From IMG/VR virus record IMGVR_UViG_3300042502_001233, positions 1-64,000 of that record: a DNA stretch of 64,000 nucleotides. One strand, written 5' to 3'. Positions 5,306-57,145 of the stretch are shown one piece after another; the first letter of the stretch is position 1, and every line of letters begins with the position of its first letter. A program made the position numbers and the translations under genes. Under the pieces are notes generated by a model, which was given only the letters and a program-made list of their open reading frames with translations, searched no databases and was not told the DNA's origin.

Positions 5306-5320
5306 AACATTTATGTTTAG

Positions 5321-5393
5321 TTGAGTAAGAGGGTTTCGAACCCTACGCTACCACCCGTCTAGGTGGTCTTCTAACCAATTAAAGTATTACCCA
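5321..5393 (-). tRNA. degenerate tRNA, anticodon uncertain
   Basis: TGGGTAA/TTACTCA acceptor, D and T arms; anticodon loop not 7 nt. Confidence 0.45.
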
Positions 5394-6495: not shown

Positions 6496-6502
6496 ATTTT
6501 TG

Positions 6503-6588
6503 CAGCTACAACGGGAGTCGAACCCGCTACGTGGATAAATCCACACTAGAGTGACAGTCTAGCACACCAACCGTTATGCGCTGTAGCT
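6503..6588 (-). tRNA. tRNA-Asp(GTC) with long variable arm
   Basis: CTAGA-CTGTCAC-TCTAG followed by hairpin GTGGA-TTTA-TCCAC. Confidence 0.85.
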
Positions 6589-9904: not shown

Positions 9905-9967
9905 TTGTGTTTTATATTAAAAATAACTCACTTTTGAAAAAAGTAAATATTAACCAGTGATTTATTG

Positions 9968-10053
9968 TAGGGCTAGCTGGACTCGAACCAGCGTTATACT
10001 TCTCGTCTCCATCTTGTAAGGATGGGATGTTTAACCAACTACACCATAGCCCC
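9968..10053 (-). tRNA. tRNA-Val(TAC) with long variable region
   Basis: CCATC-CTTACAA-GATGG plus 16-nt variable region. Confidence 0.85.
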
Positions 10054-24854: not shown

Positions 24855-25805
24855 TTAGAGCATTTTGTATAACAATTTGTCATCGTAGTTAACTATGAAG
24901 TCTTCTACTGAATCAACTTTACCATCAACCAACCCAAAATACAATCCAGTGAATTGTTTTAAGTCGTGTTTTCCACAAACTTCAAAGACAGCCGCAGCGT
25001 ATCTTTTCTTTTCTTCTTTGGTTATGTTTCTTGGTTTACGAGCGCTTAACTCACCCCACATTTCATTTAACTTTACAGTCAATTTGTCGTAGTTCTCTTT
25101 AAGTCTTAACAATTCGTCTTTTCTTTCTGGGAAAGTTGAGGCGAATTCTTCTATCTCGTTAGATTTAACGATAGTTATGATATTGTGTTCAGCAGTTTTA
25201 CCTTTAAGGTGATGTGCGTGTACGTAAGCTGGGTTTTTTATCTTGATACGATTGAAATTAGCGTCTACAACAACGTAACCTTCTTCTGACCATGGCATAC
25301 CCTCAAATGTACGTAACAACGCACCCACATCTTTAGCGTTCAAGTCAAATCTTTTAACCAATGGTAATCTTAAAGATACGGATACCATTTCTAAGTCTTT
25401 CCAAGACAATTCCACTAAAGTCACTCGGTTTCTAACAGTCAACAAAGTTGCTGATGATTCTCCGTGTGGTGCTACAACGATATTGTATGGAGTAGTTAAC
25501 TCAAAAACGTATACGTGGTCTTTATCCAACATACATGGGTTTAACGCGTATTGTTTTGTTACAGTATCCCAAAATAACGAGTTGAATGTTGTTCCCATTT
25601 TGTTGTTTACTTCACCTTCACCTTCGGCTGTACCAGTTGTACCAGCAAACCATTTATTAGCGTGCCAATCCCAATATACTTGGATTAATGAATTATGTAC
25701 TAGAATACCATTAGCGAAAAAATTATTAGTTATTTTGGTTTGAATGTCGTATCTTTTAGATTCACAAGTAATTGATTTGATACTTTTTATTTTAACTATT
25801 TTCAT
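24855..25805 (-). CDS. split intein C-fragment (38 aa) + RNA ligase 1 C-extein
   Basis: ...NNFFANGILVHN|SLI; FELTTPYN, EGYVV, RIKIK. Confidence 0.9.
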   Translation of the reverse strand: MKIVKIKSIKSITCESKRYDIQTKITNNFFANGILVHNSLIQVYWDWHANKWFAGTTGTAEGEGEVNNKMGTTFNSLFWDTVTKQYALNPCMLDKDHVYVFELTTPYNIVVAPHGESSATLLTVRNRVTLVELSWKDLEMVSVSLRLPLVKRFDLNAKDVGALLRTFEGMPWSEEGYVVVDANFNRIKIKNPAYVHAHHLKGKTAEHNIITIVKSNEIEEFASTFPERKDELLRLKENYDKLTVKLNEMWGELSARKPRNITKEEKKRYAAAVFEVCGKHDLKQFTGLYFGLVDGKVDSVEDFIVNYDDKLLYKML

Positions 25806-35763: not shown

Positions 35764-35765
35764 AG

Positions 35766-35849
35766 TTGTGACGGTGGGGCTCGAACCCACATTGTGTTAT
35801 AAACACCCAGCGTATCAGGCTGGTGACTAAACCATTCATCCACATCACA
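35766..35849 (-). tRNA. tRNA-Ile(GAT) with long variable arm
   Basis: CCAGC-CTGATAC-GCTGG + GTGTT-TAT-AACAC hairpin. Confidence 0.8.
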
Positions 35850-36113: not shown

Positions 36114-36120
36114 AATTTAG

Positions 36121-36207
36121 GGTGAAAAGACGGGACTCGAACCCGCAAGGACATTTCTGTCATCTGGCTCACAACCAGACTCGCTACCGTTACGTACTAC
36201 AATCACC
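36121..36207 (-). tRNA. tRNA-His(GTG) with long variable arm
   Basis: TCTGG-TTGTGAG-CCAGA + GACA-GAAA-TGTC; imperfect acceptor. Confidence 0.75.
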
Positions 36208-36216
36208 ATGTATTTC

Positions 36217-42974: not shown

Positions 42975-43025
42975 ACCTATAAATATCCTATAAAATAAAA
43001 AAGGGCCTCAGTGGGCCCTAATTTA

Positions 43026-43439
43026 TTATACTACATGTAGCTTTTCAATCAAATCTTTTTTGTATTGTTCCATAACTTTGTAATTTACGTCTGGAGCATC
43101 CATTGAAGCTATGATTTCTTTCAAACCATCAATTATAGGTTGTGTTTTTCTTTTAAGTCTAACACTCATGTAACCTTGGTCCAAAAACATAAGATGTTTA
43201 AGACCATTCTTAGCGTTAGGGCTTGACCAACCGTCAATGTTGAATTGGATGTTGATTCTGTTGGGTGTTAAATCTTCATTTAACAATATTCCCATCCAAT
43301 ATGTTTTACCATCTTTGGTTTTAGCGTCAAAAAGTCTAAAAGCTACTTTTTTATCGTTGATTGTTTTTACAAATACATGTTCTGATGTTTTGTTTAAATA
43401 TGTGTTCAATTCTTGTTGAACTTGTTCTAATGTTTTCAT
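43026..43439 (-). CDS. hypothetical protein
   Basis: 137-aa ORF downstream of RAPP minigene. Confidence 0.7.
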   Translation of the reverse strand: MKTLEQVQQELNTYLNKTSEHVFVKTINDKKVAFRLFDAKTKDGKTYWMGILLNEDLTPNRINIQFNIDGWSSPNAKNGLKHLMFLDQGYMSVRLKRKTQPIIDGLKEIIASMDAPDVNYKVMEQYKKDLIEKLHVV

Positions 43440-43556
43440 TTTTTTTTCTTTTTAAGTTTATTATTTTTATGTTTTGTCCAAGAACATAGACACGATGTCT
43501 ATGTTGATGTCTATGTTGGACATGTTGTCCAAGATAGTGTCCAAGTTATAATAAAC

Positions 43557-43586
43557 TTAAGGCGGTGCTCTGATAATCTATTTCAT
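43557..43586 (-). promoter_or_regulatory. amber-containing leader minigene M-K-(TAG)-I-I-R-A-P-P-stop
   Basis: ATG AAA TAG ATT ATC AGA GCA CCG CCT TAA. Confidence 0.55.
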
Positions 43587-43608
43587 AGTTTCTATTATTT
43601 AAAGTTTG

Positions 43609-43683
43609 AGGTCGGAGAGAGATTTGAACTCCCACCGTAAAGGTTCTTGCGGAACCAGTGCCTTACCATTCGACCATCCGACC
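43609..43683 (-). tRNA. atypical tRNA-Cys(GCA)-like
   Basis: GGTCGGA/TCCGACC, U73, GGTT-CCGCAAG-AACC. Confidence 0.6.
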
Positions 43684-43689
43684 CTGTTA

Positions 43690-43947
43690 TTACGGATAAA
43701 TCCTTGCGGTTATACCTTCATCCGTAGTTGTTATTTGTATCTTGCCTTTGAATTTCAACGACCCTTTGGTACTTGGGTTATCTGGCGTTTCTTTGGTTGA
43801 AAATCCTATACCAGAATCCATAACCAAGTGGTCCACATAATAGGTTTGACCTTTGGCTTTTATTACCCACATCGGAATGCTAGGTTCTTGCAAATGCATT
43901 TTGTTGAAATGAAATATAATCTCGGTTCTTTTATCTATGTTAAGCAT
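43690..43947 (-). CDS. hypothetical protein
   Basis: 85-aa ORF coupled to Pth2-like gene. Confidence 0.7.
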   Translation of the reverse strand: MLNIDKRTEIIFHFNKMHLQEPSIPMWVIKAKGQTYYVDHLVMDSGIGFSTKETPDNPSTKGSLKFKGKIQITTTDEGITARIYP

Positions 43948-44290
43948 ATTGAACCTCCTTTCCCATTAACGGACATGAGCTCGTTAATTTTTTGGCAGCA
44001 TCGGTTGGCTCAAAAGCAACAGCCGTTATTTCGTTACCCAAGTCAGGTTCACGGAAAATTGTGTGTTTGATACCCATAAAGATAGCTTTGGTAATCAATT
44101 TGATTAGCGCTTCTTCATCAGCGACAGTTAATAATGCTAAATAGTTTGATTTTGTTTGCCATTCGGTAGCTTCAACAGGGTGTTGATATTGGAAATCTAC
44201 CAAGGCATGAGCTGATTGAACAGCTTGTTGTGAAGGTGTTAAGTCACGTCTTGTGACAACTCTTAATTTTTGATTGTTAATCTAAGTCAT
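43940..44290 (-). CDS. peptidyl-tRNA hydrolase 2-like protein with in-frame TAG at codon 3
   Basis: ATG ACT TAG ATT... continues in frame: KLRVVTRRDL..QQAVQSAHA...FREPDLGNEITA. Confidence 0.75.
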
Positions 44291-44350
44291 AATTTCTAAT
44301 TTTTTGTTTATTATAAATATACCACACTTTTAAAAAATGTAAAGTGTTTG

Positions 44351-44423
44351 TAGTTCTAATCGGACTCGAACCGATATCTCTCCGTTTTAGAGGCGGGTGT
44401 ATTCACGTTAATACTATAGAACC
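44351..44423 (-). tRNA. amber suppressor tRNA (anticodon CTA)
   Basis: GGTTCTA/TAGAACT acceptor, loop CT-CTA-AA, canonical T arm; weak anticodon stem. Confidence 0.8.
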
Positions 44424-44473
44424 TTATTGTGGTACAAAGATACCACAAGTTTTTTAATTGTACAACTTTTTTT

Positions 44474-44686
44474 CTAACTTTTTTTCAAAAATTTTCCAAG
44501 TCTTAAAACTTTCTCTTTAAATTCCTCAAAAGTTCCGTTGTTTTCAATGATGATATCAGCACATGTTTTGTCAATATCAAACGATGATGGGTCTTCCAAC
44601 GGAAGTCTTTCAGACGCATCAACCCAAATGATTATATCAAATAAACCTTGTCTCATACACTCGTTGATTTCAGCTCTATCTCGCAT
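44474..44686 (-). pseudogene. 3' half of interrupted dNMP kinase-like gene
   Basis: continues 50297..50590 at YVG|MRD; IIWVDA, ADIIIENNG. Confidence 0.75.
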
Positions 44687-45302
44687 CTAAAGATAATTCA
44701 ATAATTAAATCGTTAACAACTTTTTTTAACGCTTTAATGTCTTTTTTATCATTATAAATAACTTTACTAAAGTTAGTATAATCATCTAGATTAGTTTCTG
44801 AGATATGGTTTAAATCACGTAAGCTGTTCTCTCTAACACCCATTGGGTCGCCTTCCAGTCGAATTAAATAACCACCTTCTTTAAGGATATAGTCAGCTTC
44901 ATTAACAAATCTAACATCTGGTATCACAATAATTTTACCATTATTTAACTTAGTATCTAATTCTTCATTAAAGAATGATTTAACCCAAATATCAGTATCA
45001 TAATTATCTCTAAATAAATCAGTACCAACTAATTGTAATGTTTCACCAATAGTTTTATCAAATTGTTTAATAACTATATTTTTTTGGTCTTGAGTATAAT
45101 TACGAATCTCATTGCAGAATGGTTTATTAGCTTCATGAGTTGTCGTCATACGTATACCACTAATTATTTCCGTAATTAACCTTAATTTATCAGCCAATGC
45201 ATGTCTTTCTACTTTACCATGTAATTGCTCAGCTAATAATTCAGCAAAGGTATCTTTACCACTACCTATTTTTCCACTAATACCTATAATTTTTTTTTTC
45301 AT
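44676..45302 (-). CDS. deoxynucleoside monophosphate kinase (element-borne replacement)
   Basis: GISGKIGSGKDT, LQ.VGT..R, DVRF.NE, HISE. Confidence 0.85.
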   Translation of the reverse strand: MKKKIIGISGKIGSGKDTFAELLAEQLHGKVERHALADKLRLITEIISGIRMTTTHEANKPFCNEIRNYTQDQKNIVIKQFDKTIGETLQLVGTDLFRDNYDTDIWVKSFFNEELDTKLNNGKIIVIPDVRFVNEADYILKEGGYLIRLEGDPMGVRENSLRDLNHISETNLDDYTNFSKVIYNDKKDIKALKKVVNDLIIELSLDAR

Positions 45303-45305
45303 ATT

Positions 45306-48300
45306 TTACATTTTAAATGCTGTAACATAAATAAATTTATCACTTTCTCTTAAAACCAAGTTATCAAAACCTATTTCTAAAAGTATTCTTTTAAATTCAT
45401 CTTCATTATCTTTCCATTGATTGGCTGTTTCTGCAATCATGATTGGTTGCATAGTTCTCAATACTCTGTAAGCTTCTTTTAAATAATCTTCATAATTGCT
45501 ACCCATAAGTGATAAACTAAAAACAACAACATCTATAGATTCATCGTCTAAAGGTAATTTTGAAATATCACAAGCTATTACTGAATCATCAATGGCTACG
45601 TGGTCAAATGATAACACTTTGTTGGGTATTTCAGTTTTTAAAAGGTTTTCACCACATCCAAAATCACCAACAATATAATCTTTACGTTTAATTTGTTTAG
45701 CGATTTCTTTATATGGTATTTCTGACCAAGTTTTTCTAGCTTCACGATACAAAGTATGATACTGATACCACTCAGTTGGGTCCTCGGTTAATCGTTTGTT
45801 AGTTGTAATAGAATTTGATACACCCCAGCGTTTATTCATTTGACTGAACTCACCATATTTAGGTAGGTTATGATTAACATAATTTGGATTCAAAGGTATT
45901 TTAAATTCTTCTCTATCAAACGTGATAATCTCACCGTTGTTTAAACGATTAACCCATTCGGCCAACTCTTGTTGTGCTTCAAACACTAATCGTTCTCTTG
46001 AAGGTAGGAGATTTCTAGGAACACGCCCATCAATTGCTAAATCACCCAAAGTTGCTTTAAATCTAATTATATTATGTCTACGTCTGTCCCAACTCCAAAT
46101 ATGTTCGCCAGCTGGTATAATAACTTGTGGAATATAAATGTTAACTTTATCAAATTTAGAACCTTGTCTATTAACACGACCAACTAATTGGTCATATTCA
46201 GAACTGGTCCATGGAAGTACTATTGGTATCAATGTGTCACACACATATTGAATACCGTCTACACCAGTACCAACTGGTGCCGAACCAATTAAAACATCTA
46301 ATTTACCCTTTTTAAAAGCTTCTAAACCACTTTTATCGTCACCAGTATAAAATCCTATACTAAAACCTAAATCTTTTACGAATTTACCTATAATATCGGT
46401 TAATTCAGTAACATAATATGTGTATATTAAAGTCCCCCTTTTTATTTTATCTTTAACAGAATCAAGTTTAGTATTAATTAAAACTTTTTCGAACTCGCTA
46501 ACAGCACCTTTAGGTATTGCTATGATTTCATTAAACAAATGACTACCATCAGATTCTATGATTTCTTCGTTAACTGAAATACCATAATTAGGTTTATAAC
46601 GAAGACCATATCTTGTTAATGCTTTATACATTTCAATACCATTTACAATGTTTTCTTTGGTTTCTAATTCGTTATGAGATTCACCTGTTAACAATTCAAT
46701 TAATTTTTTAGGTTCTGTTAAATTGTTAATAATTGGTGTTGCCGACATAGCCATAACTAATAAATTTTCATTATCTTCTTTAGAGTTTATTATTAGTTTT
46801 TTAACAACATTCCTTCTAATAGATTCTTCGTTATCACGCTGCTTAACATTTTGAACTTCATCTAAAATTATGTAATCAATCTGATTATATTTTAACAATT
46901 CAGAAACAATATATTCACCATCTTCTAACTGAAACGTTTCATAATTTAATACTAAATAATTATAAACATTTTCTTTTAATTTTATGTTATGTTTATGAAC
47001 TAAATTATAATTAGAATTAACACCTTCTAATTCTTTCTTAACGTAAATCTGATTGTTAGTGAAATATTCATTTATGGACTCAACCCAGCCCTCAACAGTT
47101 GCATTATTACAAATTATTATAGTGTTTTTAGCACCAGCTAACCTACCAGCAAATATTGCAGATAAAGTTTTACCAGCACCAGTTCCAGACCAGTTACCGT
47201 ATTTTTTCTCTTTAATTAAACGATAACTAATTAGTTTTTGCATTAAGTTTGGCTGATGTTGAAAAATGTAATCACTTGGGGCGACTATTTTACAAACTTC
47301 TTCGTATTCACTAAAAAACCAGTCTTTAATTATTGTAAACCTTTCACCACCAGTTTCACCTCTTAAAGTATCAACATCTATTTGATTGTTAAGAACTTTA
47401 TTCCACAATTTTTTTAATTGATTCTTTAACAAGAAATCAATATTTTCATCATCCAAAGAAGCGGTAACCATTGTATTATCATACATATGTAATTCTTTAA
47501 TTGGGTCTAAAGGTGCTAATGACTCTGGTTCTTCTTCAGTAATTTCATCAACATTACCCTCAACTAAATCAACTTCTAAATTAGTTGGTTCGTTTAGAAT
47601 AGAATCATTGTTGGTGTCATCGTCAGACTCATCGTTTTCTAACGTATCTAATATATCGTGAATTAATCTTTCTCTTTCCTCCGAACCAGCTTCAGAAGAA
47701 GTTAAAGAATCTAATGACCCTATTTGTTGTATTTTTTTAGCGAGATTGTTTGAATTTATTATGGTTATTAGTTCAACTGAGTCCATATAAATTAAATCTT
47801 TTTCTAAAGATTTAATAAAGTCTAACATATAACGTTTATTCCAATAGTGACCATCACCTAAAGAACCTAACCAATCACCCATAGAAACCCACCCAGAATA
47901 TTTGTATGTTTTTTCTGGCATTGCTGGGATGTTGTCTGGTTTTTTTATGTTTTTCCATTCACTATAAGATTTAAGACCTAAAGTTCTAGCATATTCTCTA
48001 GCTTCTTCAAATGGTAAAAACTCCCTAAAATTTGATAACTTACCATGACCTAACCAATCACTCCAAGATACCCAACCAGATTCTTTATAAACTTGAGATG
48101 GTGATGCTGGAATTTCATCTGGTTTAGCTGAAGATTTAGAAAACAACCTCCATTCTTTTTCACCAGTTAATTTTAAACTTCTAGCATATTCTCTAGCTTC
48201 TTCAAATGGTAGATAATCTCTTTTGTTACATGATATGTAATTAGTTCCTAACCAATCACCCAGCGACACCCAACCAGAATCTTTATAAACCCTATCTGGG

Positions 48301-49202
48301 GCACTAGGTATATTATTTGGTCTTAATTCAGATTTAATAAATTCAACCCATTCCTTTTGTCGGGTTATATTTAATTTTCTAACATATTCTCTAGCCTCTT
48401 CAAACTGTAAAAATTTTTTATCAAAATTTGATAACTTACCGTGACCTAACCAATCAACCCAAGATACCCAACCAGAATCTTTATATGTTTTATTTGGTGA
48501 TTTAGGAATTTTAACATCATAATCGGTAGATTTTAAATATGTTCTAAACTCATTAGTGTTATTTAATTTTAAATTATGTATTATTTTCCTAGCTTCTTTA
48601 AAATCATAAAACTCATCAAAATCTTTTTTATAACCTAAAAAATCACCCCAAGATTTCCACCCATAATTTTTATACATTACGTGAGGTGAATAAGGTAAAC
48701 CATTCACATTTGTTTTGTTTAAATATTCATGATATTTAGTTTGTGATGTTAAACCTAAAATTTTAACTACGTTTTTGGCCTCTTCAAAGGATAAATAATT
48801 TCTATTTTTTAAAGCAACGTAATTAGTTCCTAACCAATCACCCAGCGACACCCAACCAGAATCTTTATATATTTTATCTGGCGATGTAGGTATGTTGTGA
48901 GGCCTTAATTCAGACTTATAAAAATTTTTCCAATCTTGTTGTGTTTTTAATCCTAAACTCTTAACAAAATTTTTAGCAATTTCAAAAGGTAGGTAACCGT
49001 CTTTTAGATTCACCGATGAACATTTAGTTTTATTTAACAAAGCATATGGTGTTATTAAATGTTCTGTATTAAACTTTTTATCAATAACCACCACTTTTTG
49101 GTTAGTATTGACATATTCGACTTTGGAATAATCATAATTATCGTTCCAATTACCACTATCTCTTAATTTTTGTAAAAACTCTTTTGTTTTATCAGTCATC
49201 AT
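45306..49202 (-). CDS. repeat-containing SF2 helicase fused to SAM methyltransferase
   Basis: 6 repeats PFEEAR...GWVSWGDWLG; GTGAGKT, DEVQ, SAT; DFGCGE, FSLSLMG. Confidence 0.8.
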   Translation of the reverse strand: MMTDKTKEFLQKLRDSGNWNDNYDYSKVEYVNTNQKVVVIDKKFNTEHLITPYALLNKTKCSSVNLKDGYLPFEIAKNFVKSLGLKTQQDWKNFYKSELRPHNIPTSPDKIYKDSGWVSLGDWLGTNYVALKNRNYLSFEEAKNVVKILGLTSQTKYHEYLNKTNVNGLPYSPHVMYKNYGWKSWGDFLGYKKDFDEFYDFKEARKIIHNLKLNNTNEFRTYLKSTDYDVKIPKSPNKTYKDSGWVSWVDWLGHGKLSNFDKKFLQFEEAREYVRKLNITRQKEWVEFIKSELRPNNIPSAPDRVYKDSGWVSLGDWLGTNYISCNKRDYLPFEEAREYARSLKLTGEKEWRLFSKSSAKPDEIPASPSQVYKESGWVSWSDWLGHGKLSNFREFLPFEEAREYARTLGLKSYSEWKNIKKPDNIPAMPEKTYKYSGWVSMGDWLGSLGDGHYWNKRYMLDFIKSLEKDLIYMDSVELITIINSNNLAKKIQQIGSLDSLTSSEAGSEERERLIHDILDTLENDESDDDTNNDSILNEPTNLEVDLVEGNVDEITEEEPESLAPLDPIKELHMYDNTMVTASLDDENIDFLLKNQLKKLWNKVLNNQIDVDTLRGETGGERFTIIKDWFFSEYEEVCKIVAPSDYIFQHQPNLMQKLISYRLIKEKKYGNWSGTGAGKTLSAIFAGRLAGAKNTIIICNNATVEGWVESINEYFTNNQIYVKKELEGVNSNYNLVHKHNIKLKENVYNYLVLNYETFQLEDGEYIVSELLKYNQIDYIILDEVQNVKQRDNEESIRRNVVKKLIINSKEDNENLLVMAMSATPIINNLTEPKKLIELLTGESHNELETKENIVNGIEMYKALTRYGLRYKPNYGISVNEEIIESDGSHLFNEIIAIPKGAVSEFEKVLINTKLDSVKDKIKRGTLIYTYYVTELTDIIGKFVKDLGFSIGFYTGDDKSGLEAFKKGKLDVLIGSAPVGTGVDGIQYVCDTLIPIVLPWTSSEYDQLVGRVNRQGSKFDKVNIYIPQVIIPAGEHIWSWDRRRHNIIRFKATLGDLAIDGRVPRNLLPSRERLVFEAQQELAEWVNRLNNGEIITFDREEFKIPLNPNYVNHNLPKYGEFSQMNKRWGVSNSITTNKRLTEDPTEWYQYHTLYREARKTWSEIPYKEIAKQIKRKDYIVGDFGCGENLLKTEIPNKVLSFDHVAIDDSVIACDISKLPLDDESIDVVVFSLSLMGSNYEDYLKEAYRVLRTMQPIMIAETANQWKDNEDEFKRILLEIGFDNLVLRESDKFIYVTAFKM

Positions 49203-55207: not shown

Positions 55208-55891
55208 TTATGAAAGAAGCTCTATTTTACCTCTTAATATGTCTTTTAGACTAGCAGTCTTATTAGTGATATGGTCTACAACCATATCATCCTTTACACG
55301 ATAAGTCCTTCTTTTATCGGCACGACCACCTTCACCAATTTGTTCATTACGGTTTTCAATGGTTAATGAATCATGACCTGTTTTATAAAAGTTATTAACC
55401 CTTTGAGTTAATTCAGCAATCGCTGCTTCTTTATTTTGGTGTTGACTTCGACTATCACGTCTAACTTTAATCCCAGTTGCTATATGAGTTACAACAACAC
55501 ATGATTCAGTTTTATTCCTTTTTTGCCCACCGTTCCCAGTTCCTCTGGTTGTTTCCAAACGATATTCACTAGGATGTAATTCTACTTCCTTATAATCGTT
55601 TTCTTCCATAAGTGCTACGGTGATTGAACTTGTATGAACCCTACCTTTTCTTTCGGTTGGTGGTACTCTTTGCCACCTATGTGAACCTACATGGTTTAAG
55701 AACACATTTTTAACATTATATCCAGATATTCAGATAGTTATCATACCATCTTTCTCATCAATAACTTTAGCTTCAAATGAATAATTTTTGCAAGCTTTTA
55801 AAAAAATATCTCGCATATCTTTAATTAATAATTTTGAATCATCACCGCCTTCTGACGCTCTTAATTCTAATAAAATTTTATTTGTTTTCAT
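55208..55891 (-). CDS. class I peptide chain release factor-like protein (no domain 1) with in-frame TGA at codon 54
   Basis: LELRASEGG..., HRWQRVPPTERKGRVHTS, GGQ; frame continuous across TGA 55730-55732. Confidence 0.85.
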
Positions 55892-57053: not shown

Positions 57054-57057
57054 CTAG

Positions 57058-57145
57058 TTGCGGAAGTAGGACTCGAACCTACAACACAGTGTTACTGCTC
57101 CTCTAGGTTATGAGCCTAGCATGTTTCCATTTCCACCATTCCGCG
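57058..57145 (-). tRNA. tRNA-Met(CAT), initiator-like C1:A72, long variable arm
   Basis: CTAGG-CTCATAA-CCTAG + 20-nt variable arm. Confidence 0.8.

What the first reader, a model, noticed from the sequence alone, without database searches (positions are those of the whole stretch)
43940..44423. Amber suppressor tRNA directly upstream of a Pth2-like gene with UAG at codon 3
tRNA(CTA) at 44423-44351 is followed about 60 nt later by ATG ACT TAG ATT..., which continues in frame into the conserved N-terminal motif (VVTRRDL...QAVQSAHA) that the ORF track truncates. The window otherwise uses TAG as stop. Without suppression the gene is a Met-Thr-stop minigene, the class known from lambda bar minigenes to cause peptidyl-tRNA drop-off, which is the substrate of Pth. 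Inference: a stop-codon switch links Pth output to the suppressor/RF1 balance.
Basis: partly seen in the sequence, partly recalled or inferred. Interest (0 to 1): 0.85.

Follow-up and report, generated by a model that had tools for sequence, protein, structure and literature searches.

The report
Amber-gated Pth2 operon with suppressor tRNA
A giant lake-water phage carries a stop-codon-reading tRNA beside two reading frames that each begin with that stop codon, so an enzyme-like protein and a neighbouring gene can apparently be made only when the tRNA works; this looks like a dedicated translational switch, not a change of genetic code.

Summary
A tRNA(CUA) lies at 44351-44423(-). Sixty nt downstream is ATG ACT TAG ATT, in frame with a Pth2-fold protein (43940-44290).

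- **Conservation:** the early TAG (codon 2-5, always followed by a purine) is present in 59 of 64 distinct homologues from huge phages, down to about 40% identity.
- **Read-through is needed:** some homologues have no canonical start anywhere after the TAG.
- **Linkage:** a same-strand tRNA(CUA) lies within 3 kb in 50 of those 59.
- **Not code 15:** the window, a complete 462-kb relative and 50 kb of a cultured relative (Tenacibaculum phage pT24) show no general TAG recoding.

It is a 9-codon leader, M-K-TAG-I-I-R-A-P-P-stop (43557-43586). Its stop codon sits in a 13-bp stem with the initiation region of the next gene (43026-43439). Both the peptide motif and the stem are conserved, with compensatory changes.

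Best reading: a suppression-dependent translational switch. The amino acid inserted, any enzyme activity and the biological purpose are untested. I found no published description.

The parts
44351..44423 (-). Amber suppressor tRNA, anticodon CUA, class I, A73, anticodon loop CUCUAAA. ARAGORN labels it 'Pyl' from the anticodon alone.
   Evidence: ARAGORN; Rfam tRNA 50.6 bits, full length. Among 66 distinct relatives, 53 share the loop CUCUAAA while acceptor stems and N73 vary.
44316..44343 (-). Promoter-like site (TTTACA, 16 nt, TG-extended TATATT) between the tRNA and the gated gene. It resembles the TAnnTTTG-type box repeated across the window.
   Evidence: Consensus scan. The box TATATTTATA is conserved upstream of the gene in relatives. 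GTATATTTG is repeated in the window.
43940..44290 (-). Pth2-fold gene with an amber gate: ATG 44290-44288, ACT, TAG 44284-44282, then 113 codons, TAA 43942-43940.
   Evidence: AlphaFold model pLDDT 96; Foldseek significant PDB hits are the Pth2-family structures plus one weaker protein of unknown function (2gax), TM 0.74-0.80.
43690..43947 (-). 85-aa ORF of unknown function. Its ATG overlaps the stop of the gated gene by 8 nt (ATGCTTAA), which suggests translational coupling.
   Evidence: No Pfam, PHROG or NCBIfam match above a family cutoff; the one Pfam hit (TTHB210-like, 14.1 bits against a cutoff of 26.6) is sub-threshold.
43608..43683 (-). tRNA-Cys(GCA) inside the operon, 21 nt upstream of the leader ORF. 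It is absent from some relatives, where the leader directly follows the gated gene.
43557..43586 (-). Amber-gated leader mini-ORF M-K-TAG-I-I-R-A-P-P-stop (TAG 43580-43578; TAA 43559-43557), carrying a RAPP arrest-type motif.
   Evidence: 43 distinct DNA versions conserve [RK]-x-P-[PT] with synonymous codon variation. One copy per genome, and none with a TAA or TGA gate.
43548..43560 (-). 5' arm of the long-range stem. It starts at the last base of the final Pro codon and includes the leader's UAA stop.
   Evidence: MFE fold, z -5.07. Same placement in relatives.
43465..43547 (-). Enclosed hairpins built from repeated boxes (CTTGGACA twice plus one inverted copy; CATAGACA twice plus one inverted copy). 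These allow alternative pairings.
43452..43464 (-). 3' arm of the long-range stem. It ends 12 nt before the ATG of the next gene, inside its initiation region.
   Evidence: Cognate arms pair better than non-cognate arms: -8.66 against -5.10 kcal/mol, permutation p <= 5e-5.
43026..43439 (-). 137-aa gene X, the gene controlled by the leader. Confident model but no known fold or family.
   Evidence: Other lineages have other small genes in this position.
43002..43019 (-). Terminator-like hairpin with a T-run that closes the operon.

Best explanation
This is a suppression-dependent translational switch carried by huge phages that otherwise use the standard code. One operon holds all the parts: promoter, Pth2-like gene, orf85, tRNA-Cys, leader, gene X and terminator, with a tRNA(CUA) gene just upstream.

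**Gate 1 (direct).** The Pth2-fold protein can be made only if the UAG at codon 3 is decoded by the suppressor tRNA. Otherwise RF1 releases a dipeptide. The overlapping orf85 probably depends on the same read-through.

**Gate 2 (indirect).**
- A 9-codon leader also has UAG at codon 3.
- Only ribosomes that read through reach its R-A-P-P-stop end. There they probably pause or arrest.
- A ribosome sitting there covers the 5' arm of a 13-bp stem that otherwise sequesters the initiation region of gene X. That opens gene X for translation.

**What the operon reports.** Its output depends on how well UAG is being read as sense, that is, on charged suppressor tRNA against RF1.

**Shown here:**
- the anatomy;
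- conservation of both gates;
- the purine always found after the TAG;
- linkage to the tRNA;
- covariation of the stem;
- the absence of general recoding.

**Inferred:**
- that suppression actually occurs;
- that the ribosome pauses at the leader's end;
- that the stem represses gene X.

**Speculative purpose.** The switch may scale peptidyl-tRNA recycling and ribosome rescue to the read-through load that the suppressor causes, or hold suppression at a set level.
For: **Gate 1 is conserved and obligatory.**
- All 21 first-found homologues begin ATG, 1-2 variable codons, TAG.
- Among 64 distinct homologues, 59 have TAG at codon 2-5. The next base is A in 45 and G in 13 of the 58 distinct start contexts, never C or U. 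18 different codons directly precede the TAG.
- L018/L019 have no ATG, GTG or TTG in the 112 codons after the TAG; in L016 the first is at codon 108.
- The gate is always TAG, the rarest stop here, never TAA or TGA.

**Linkage to the tRNA.**
- A tRNA(CUA) lies upstream of the gene in 18 of 18 close relatives, mostly within about 60 nt (at most about 190 nt).
- It lies within 3 kb and on the same strand in 50 of 59 gated homologues, against 1 of 5 ungated ones (Fisher p 0.005, not corrected for phylogeny).

**No general recoding.**
- Window: ORF coverage 0.73 to 0.75 with TAG as sense, equal to the TGA control. In most 6-kb loci the gain is about the size of the gated gene itself.
- Whole 462-kb LR756500: 0.818 to 0.828, against 0.826 for the control. 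Its only long ORF needing read-through is the Pth2-like gene.
- pT24, 50 kb including structural genes: 0.849 to 0.858.

**Gate 2.**
- The leader is conserved in about 40 loci, with Arg, Pro, Gly and Ala encoded by varying synonymous codons.
- There is one copy per genome, and no TAA- or TGA-gated analogue.
- The window fold has z -5.07 and a 13-bp stem joining the stop region to the region before the next ATG.
- A stop-region/pre-ATG duplex is recovered in all 17 first loci (one, L017, no better than shuffled sequence) and in most of the 32 elements analysed later, with compensatory substitutions and wholly different arm sequences.
- Cognate arms beat non-cognate arms with p <= 5e-5.

**Literature.** RAPP and RGPP at the C-terminus of small upstream ORFs arrest ribosomes and regulate the downstream gene (PMC12992588, PMC10951233, PMC7897499).
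Against: - No expression, proteomic or ribosome-profiling data exist for any of these phages.
- The amino acid inserted is unknown. tRNA similarity gives no isoacceptor.
- The window's tRNA has two C.A mismatches in its anticodon stem.
- Published work says a RAPP motif alone is not enough for arrest and needs an adjacent N-terminal segment (PMC12992588). This leader is only 9 codons, and many relatives end in KPP, RPP or RGPT, so a pause or slow termination is more defensible than a true arrest.
- The AU-rich stem is modest (-9 to -14 kcal/mol), and RNAalifold on a MAFFT alignment did not recover it.
- Only 74 kb of this 362-kb genome was read, so recoded late genes elsewhere in it are not excluded.
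- Nine gated homologues show no tRNA(CUA) within 3 kb, four of them in loci with truncated flanks.
- Why a standard-code phage keeps a suppressor tRNA at all is unexplained.
Confidence: 0.7

Rival explanations
1. Ordinary genome-wide TAG reassignment (code 15, as in crAss-like and Lak phages). On this view the TAG in the Pth2-like gene is one of many recoded codons, and the tRNA serves late genes outside the window.
For: - Suppressor tRNAs are typical of TAG-recoded phages, whose early regions are standard-code compatible (bioRxiv 10.1101/2021.08.26.457843; PMC13037316).
- The 735-kb relative LR756501 has a second in-frame TAG inside the gene body.
- 288 kb of this genome was not examined.
Against: - The TAG sits at codon 2-5 in 59 of 64 homologues, not at scattered positions.
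- A complete 462-kb genome that carries the module gains nothing when TAG is read as sense.
- The same holds for the window plus its 9.6-kb extension, and for 50 kb of pT24 that includes structural genes.
Confidence: 0.12
2. No suppression takes place. ATG-NNN-TAG is a two-codon upstream ORF, and the protein starts at the adjacent AUU (a rare start codon, as in infC) by termination-reinitiation.
For: ATT follows the TAG in 38 of 58 distinct starts. AUU is a known rare bacterial start codon (own knowledge).
Against: - The codon after the TAG is GTA or GTT in 11 cases, and ACT, AAA, GGC, GGA or AGA in others. None of these is a start codon.
- The stop is always TAG and never the far commoner TAA.
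- The model does not explain the tight linkage to tRNA(CUA) genes.
- The same gate opens a leader whose downstream peptide is itself conserved.
Confidence: 0.07
3. The unsuppressed Met-Thr-stop works as a bar-like minigene that produces peptidyl-tRNA drop-off, creating the substrate or the demand for the hydrolase.
For: The formal anatomy fits: AUG, one codon, stop. Short peptidyl-tRNAs are prone to drop-off (own knowledge). Ribosome-rescue genes are nearby: a GGQ-only RF1 fragment in the window and tmRNA genes in relatives.
Against: - The number of codons before the TAG varies (none to 3 between ATG and TAG) and their identity varies, so no specific tRNA would be sequestered.
- The always-purine base after the TAG is the context I recall as favouring suppression over termination (own knowledge).
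- Nothing here tests drop-off or toxicity.
Confidence: 0.06
4. Artefact or decay: a sequencing error, or a pseudogene with a chance in-frame stop.
For: None beyond the bare presence of a stop codon.
Against: Three independent metagenome runs have identical sequence. The gate is conserved in 59 distinct homologues, with intact downstream frames and a confident Pth2 fold.
Confidence: 0.01

Closest known systems
Phage stop-codon recoding with suppressor tRNAs, including the Jade-phage 'code change module' (Borges et al., bioRxiv 10.1101/2021.08.26.457843; Peters et al., PMC9523058)
   Same: A phage-encoded tRNA(CUA) makes translation of particular phage genes conditional on suppression. Recoding was proposed there as a regulator of gene expression.
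   Different: Here the surrounding genome, and a complete relative, are not recoded. The in-frame TAGs are two, at a fixed position right after the start codon, inside the tRNA's own operon, and they gate a translation-factor-like gene rather than lysis or structural genes.
RAPP/RGPP arrest peptides and SecM-type leader control (ApdA, ApdP, ApcA, SecM; PMC7897499, PMC10951233, PMC12992588)
   Same: A small upstream ORF ends in R-A-P-P or a related motif, and the initiation region of the downstream gene is held in a stem that a ribosome parked at that end would open.
   Different: The leader is only 7-15 codons and has no secretory or membrane segment. Its input is read-through of an amber codon at codon 2-5, not protein export. 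Many versions end in KPP, RPP or RGPT. No arrest has been shown.
prfB (RF2) autoregulation through an early in-frame UGA
   Same: An in-frame stop codon early in a translation-factor gene makes the gene's output depend on how efficiently that stop is terminated.
   Different: prfB escapes by +1 frameshifting and senses its own product. Here escape is by a dedicated suppressor tRNA, and no feedback from the protein is established.
Pth2 in jumbo phages (Iyer et al., PMC7824862) and mycobacteriophage cluster C 'peptidyl tRNA hydrolase'
   Same: Same protein superfamily, found in tRNA-rich and RNA-repair-rich regions of large phage genomes.
   Different: That work does not mention the amber gate or the tRNA linkage. 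GC-rich homologues start with a normal ATG. The phage subfamily lacks the GK loop of cellular Pth2.
Lambda bar minigenes and Pth
   Same: If not suppressed, the start of the gene reads AUG, one codon, stop.
   Different: bar toxicity is an effect seen in Pth-defective hosts. Here the stop is specifically UAG in a suppression-friendly context, beside its suppressor.

Membership tests
Pth2 peptidyl-tRNA hydrolase (PF01981 / TIGR00283) | Sequence match at the family's curated threshold | tested here: inconclusive
   Pfam 24.9 bits against a cutoff of 23. NCBIfam equivalogs are far below their cutoffs: 23.7 against 126, and 22.6 against 82. Best PHROG hit is phrog_1866, function unknown.
Pth2 peptidyl-tRNA hydrolase (PF01981 / TIGR00283) | Pth2 alpha/beta fold | tested here: met
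   Model pLDDT 96. The significant PDB matches are Pth2-family structures (2zv3, 3erj, 1q7s, 1wn2, 1xty, 1rlk), TM 0.74-0.80, E about 1e-7, plus one weaker match to 2gax, a protein of unknown function.
Pth2 peptidyl-tRNA hydrolase (PF01981 / TIGR00283) | Catalytic residues of cellular Pth2 (Lys of the GK loop, Asp of the D-x-G-x-T segment; residue roles are from my own knowledge and were not verified here) | tested here: inconclusive
   In the alignment to 2zv3 the GK loop is deleted, a Gln lies where that Lys would be, and RDAGHT aligns with REPD. The family instead keeps R11, D13, Q22, H25, E78, P79, D80 and T86.
Pth2 peptidyl-tRNA hydrolase (PF01981 / TIGR00283) | Hydrolysis of peptidyl-tRNA | not testable with these tools
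   Needs an enzyme assay.
Amber suppressor tRNA | Canonical tRNA with anticodon CUA | tested here: met
Amber suppressor tRNA | Conserved in-frame UAG targets that require decoding | tested here: met
Amber suppressor tRNA | Aminoacylation, and identity of the amino acid inserted | not testable with these tools
   Similarity to other tRNAs is uninformative. Variable acceptor stems with a fixed anticodon loop suggest anticodon-driven charging. Gln or Lys is a guess from my own knowledge.
tRNA-Pyl / pyrrolysine system | Atypical tRNA-Pyl architecture: short D loop, 3-nt variable loop, long anticodon stem (own knowledge) | tested here: not met
   The standard tRNA model matches end to end, with an 8-nt D loop and a 5-nt variable loop. 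No PylRS was seen among the ORFs scanned, but the window was not searched exhaustively.
TAG-reassigned (code 15) phage genome | Many in-frame TAGs, and coding density that rises when TAG is read as sense | tested here: not met
   Window; complete relative LR756500; pT24, 50 kb. The other 288 kb of this contig was not examined.
RAPP-type arrest-peptide leader | [quoted passage not shown] | tested here: met
   The window leader ends I-I-R-A-P-P-stop. Relatives carry RAPP, RGPP, RGPT, RAPT, KPP or RPP.
RAPP-type arrest-peptide leader | Adjacent N-terminal segment that supports arrest (stated as required in PMC12992588) | tested here: not met
   Only 4-5 residues precede the motif.
RAPP-type arrest-peptide leader | Initiation region of the downstream gene sequestered in a structure that a ribosome at the arrest site would disrupt | tested here: met
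   (computational only).
RAPP-type arrest-peptide leader | Demonstrated ribosome stalling | not testable with these tools
   Needs toeprinting or ribosome profiling.

The most novel reading that the evidence does not exclude
In standard-code huge phages the suppressor tRNA is not a decoding tool for the genome. It is a dedicated trans-acting regulator whose only cis targets are two amber-gated frames in its own operon. Together they would form a sensor of the cell's UAG-decoding state: RF1 activity against the integrity or charging of phage tRNA. That state would then license a Pth2-like factor and a second unknown protein. This would be a tRNA-operated translational checkpoint of a kind not described before.
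Probability: 0.35. Interest if true: 0.9.

Novelty: new variant of a known kind. Interest (0 to 1): 0.82.

Why it matters
- **A reason for suppressor tRNAs in standard-code phages.** Until now they have been read only as signs of code change.
- **A natural design principle.** A stop codon placed just after the start acts as a cheap, clean translational gate. The same gate is used directly on a protein and indirectly through a leader peptide and an RNA stem.
- **Annotation.** Pipelines truncate or miss this gene family. pT24's GenBank entry starts the gene about 45 codons late, and many database calls are 87-93 aa fragments.
- **Testability.** A cultured phage of a flavobacterium (Tenacibaculum phage pT24, LC168164.1) carries both the gate and the tRNA. 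The short gate-plus-tRNA pair could also serve as an orthogonal expression switch.

Tried and rejected
- **DNA search.** Megablast of the locus against GenBank phages found nothing. Relatives were reached only through protein searches.
- **tRNA identity.** Similarity to 77 co-resident tRNAs gave no consistent nearest isoacceptor.
- **Over-diverse alignment.** The 90-sequence alignment was too diverse for the search for related loci. A 12-sequence subset worked.
- **Structure from alignment.** MAFFT did not put the 3' arms in register. RNAalifold on such an alignment returned only a weak local hairpin and missed the long-range stem. I therefore used per-sequence folds, duplex energies with shuffles, and a cognate against non-cognate permutation. 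I did not build a covariance model, because it would only re-find close relatives.
- **Early TAG as a general feature.** Rejected. In LR756500, early-TAG long ORFs (13) are no commoner than early-TAA (27) or early-TGA (6) relative to trinucleotide counts. All but the Pth2-like gene and three others (first ATG 25-39 codons in) have an ATG within about 14 codons downstream.
- **Gene X.** Pfam, PHROGs, NCBIfam, the ESM Atlas, PDB and BFVD fold searches all gave nothing.
- **Ribozymes and riboswitches.** Rfam finds only the two tRNAs here, plus a sub-threshold sRNA hit (SpF41, 23.1 bits against a gathering score of 52).
- **RNA evidence.** The only RNA-library match is a 211-nt contig from a relative at 93% identity. 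This does not show transcription.
- **Literature.** Searches for an amber-gated Pth or an amber-gated leader found nothing.
- **Catalytic residues.** One paper was checked for Pth2 catalytic residues and did not give them.

Full report
**What the window is.** It is AT-rich (about 31% GC), and almost all genes lie on the minus strand. It carries 32 tRNA genes. It equals positions 1-64000 of a 362-kb IMG/VR contig, IMGVR_UViG_3300042502_001233, from lake-water metagenomes. Its genes are those of a huge phage's translation and RNA-repair region:
- a CCA-adding enzyme, an RNA ligase and a Pnkp-like kinase/phosphoesterase;
- PARP and ART domains, DnaJ, an HSP90-like ATPase and a dNMP kinase.

Promoter-like boxes of the TAnnTTTG type and what look to me like A-rich leaders lacking a Shine-Dalgarno sequence (read by eye, not scanned) suggest a Bacteroidota-type host. 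That host assignment is inference.

**The observation.**
- The tRNA(CUA) lies at 44351-44423(-).
- Sixty nt downstream is ATG ACT TAG ATT.
- The frame then runs 113 codons to TAA at 43940. It matches Pfam PTH2 from its fifth residue.
- The first canonical start after the TAG is 26 residues in, inside the domain.
- Within the window TAG otherwise acts as a stop. Five long ORFs end in it, and one of these ends in TAA in a relative. No other long ORF needs read-through.
- Three independent metagenome runs have identical sequence across both TAGs discussed here.

**Conservation of the gate.**
- Nineteen IMG/VR relatives (61-100% identity) and three huge-phage genomes from GenBank (40-50% identity) all begin ATG, one or two variable codons, TAG.
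- A wider search gave 80 loci down to 39% identity.
- Of 64 distinct genes, 59 have TAG at codon 2-5: codon 3 in 33, codon 4 in 15, codon 5 in 9 and codon 2 in 1 (counts from the 58 distinct start contexts).
- Eighteen different codons directly precede the TAG.
- The base after it is always a purine, A in 45 and G in 13.
- Two relatives have no canonical start anywhere after the TAG.
- The five genes without the gate come from GC-richer contigs and start with a normal ATG.
- In the protein databases many gene callers have already written this position as Q, for example 'MTQINNQKL'.

**Linkage to the tRNA.**
- A tRNA(CUA) lies upstream of the gene in all 18 close relatives that have upstream sequence, mostly within about 60 nt.
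- It lies within 3 kb and on the same strand in 50 of the 59 gated genes, against 1 of 5 ungated genes.
- The 66 distinct suppressor tRNAs differ widely in acceptor stem and discriminator base. 53 share the anticodon loop CUCUAAA. That points to anticodon-based charging. The amino acid cannot be named from the sequence.

**This is not ordinary code 15.**
- Reading TAG as sense adds nothing to the window beyond the TGA control.
- In most 6-kb loci it adds about the length of the gated gene itself.
- I joined the complete 462-kb genome LR756500.1, which carries the gate, the tRNA and the leader. ORF coverage is 0.818 in the standard code, 0.828 with TAG as sense, and 0.826 with TGA as sense.
- The 180-330 kb stretch of that genome is already 94-97% covered in the standard code.
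- Its only long ORF that needs early read-through is the Pth2-like gene.
- In the cultured Tenacibaculum phage pT24, a 50-kb stretch with annotated structural genes behaves the same way. The gene there begins ATG AAA TAG ATA, 2.5 kb downstream of an annotated 'tRNA-Sup'. GenBank starts the CDS about 45 codons too late.

**A second gated element.**
- The motif ATGNNNTAGATT occurs once more in the window, at 43586. It opens a 9-codon ORF, M-K-TAG-I-I-R-A-P-P-stop, 21 nt after tRNA-Cys.
- Every close relative has a counterpart. So do many distant ones, including all three GenBank huge phages.
- The consensus is M, x, TAG, I, then [RK]-x-P-[PT] at or near the end. Examples are RAPP, RGPP, RGPT, RAPT, KPP and RPP.
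- Arg, Pro, Gly and Ala are encoded by varying synonymous codons, so the peptide itself is under selection.
- There is one such ORF in the window and one in LR756500, and none gated by TAA or TGA.
- RAPP and RGPP are published ribosome-arrest motifs at the ends of small regulatory ORFs (PMC12992588, PMC10951233, PMC7897499).

**The RNA structure behind the leader.**
- The window's leader region folds with z -5.07.
- A 13-bp stem pairs 43560-43548 with 43464-43452. The first arm is the last base of the final Pro codon, the UAA stop and the next nine bases. The second arm ends 12 nt before the ATG of the 137-aa gene X.
- The same arrangement is predicted in all 17 loci first examined; in one (L017) the duplex is no better than shuffled sequence. 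It shows compensatory substitutions, matched insertions, and in distant lineages wholly different arm sequences.
- In one genome the arm pairs with a Shine-Dalgarno-like AAGGAGG. In several, the 3' arm overlaps the start codon.
- Cognate arms pair better than non-cognate ones: -8.66 against -5.10 kcal/mol, n = 32, permutation p <= 5e-5.
- Stem positions show up to six canonical pair types across 35 distinct elements.
- A ribosome with the last Pro codon in its P site should cover about a dozen bases downstream, which is essentially the whole 5' arm. A ribosome released at codon 3 would not reach it. The footprint size is from my own knowledge.

**Operon and protein.**
- A promoter-like site lies at 44343-44316, and a terminator-like hairpin at 43019-43002. 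They bracket the Pth2-like gene, orf85, tRNA-Cys, the leader and gene X.
- The Pth2-like protein models with pLDDT 96. Its significant PDB matches are Pth2 structures at TM 0.74-0.80, plus one weaker protein of unknown function.
- It lacks the GK loop of cellular Pth2 and keeps a different set of polar residues. The fold is settled; the activity is not.
- Gene X has a confident model but no known fold or family.
- In other lineages the leader precedes at least three other small gene families, and in one genome the Pth2-like gene itself.

**Interpretation.** The comparative data support a two-point translational switch operated by the co-encoded suppressor tRNA.
- The purpose is inferred. A suppressor active in a standard-code cell should cause read-through and stalled ribosomes.
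- These phages also carry a GGQ-only RF1 fragment (window 55208-55609) and, in relatives, tmRNA genes.
- Tying a Pth2-like factor to actual suppression would therefore make sense.
- A homeostatic loop in which the protein acts on the suppressor is equally open.
- I found no description of either gate in the papers checked.

Noticed in passing
window 55208-55609 (-): A 133-aa protein with a GGQ motif. It matches only the C-terminal catalytic part of RF1 (NCBIfam prfA positions 203-333, E 1.5e-29) and has no codon-recognition domain. It could be a codon-independent release or rescue factor of the ArfB/PrfH type.
   Followed up: partly
window 44474-45302 (-): The dNMP kinase appears split. A 208-aa ORF ends in TAG at 44678-44676. 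An overlapping 70-aa ORF in another frame (44686-44474) matches the C-terminal part of longer dNMP kinase PHROGs (phrog_139, phrog_38514). This could be a frameshift, or a true two-gene arrangement.
   Followed up: no
window 5320-5393 (-): ARAGORN reports a tRNA with a four-base anticodon (agac), next to tRNA-Ala. It may be a frameshift-suppressor-like tRNA or a miscall.
   Followed up: no
window 6502-6588, 9967-10053, 35765-35849, 36120-36208, 57057-57145 (-): Several tRNAs that are normally about 75 nt long (Asp, Val, Ile, His, Met) are 85-89 nt here. This suggests introns or insertions, as has been reported for phage tRNAs.
   Followed up: no
L018/L019 249-620; L020 2654-3032; L022 3188-3533: Relatives encode tmRNA genes 2-5 kb upstream of the tRNA(CUA)/Pth2-like module. 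None was called in the window.
   Followed up: no
window 43465-43547 (-): Inside the long-range stem are two box families, each present as two direct copies plus one inverted copy (CTTGGACA and CATAGACA). A third CTTGGACA lies near the 3' arm. These could form alternative hairpins or a protein-binding array.
   Followed up: partly
window 44427-44448: An 8-bp hairpin lies directly 5' of the suppressor tRNA. On the opposite strand it scores as a terminator.
   Followed up: no
window 45306-49202 (-): A 1,298-aa protein with about seven repeats of a K-D-S-G-W-V-S-x-G-D-W-L-G motif at its N-terminus, followed by what look (by eye only, not scanned against any library) like helicase-type and methyltransferase-type regions.
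   Followed up: no
L120 44865 (Tenacibaculum phage pT24, record about 191865): A possible amber-gated mini-ORF, M-V-TAG-N-N-Q-P-P-I-K-I-M, lies 270 nt after the annotated tRNA-Sup. It may be the counterpart of the leader in this cultured phage.
   Followed up: no
L002 3001-3318 (LR756501.1): The 735-kb phage's homologue has a second in-frame TAG in the gene body, and two tRNA(CUA) genes lie 2 kb downstream. That genome may be truly TAG-recoded.
   Followed up: no
L118 2347-2419 (Prevotella phage Lak-B5): The Lak homologue has no early TAG. A tRNA with anticodon UUA (ochre-suppressor type) lies 0.6 kb upstream.
   Followed up: no
window 24855-25805 (-): A 316-aa ORF begins with a match to the C-terminal end of an intein splicing domain (below Pfam's threshold). 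It may be an intein remnant or a split gene.
   Followed up: no
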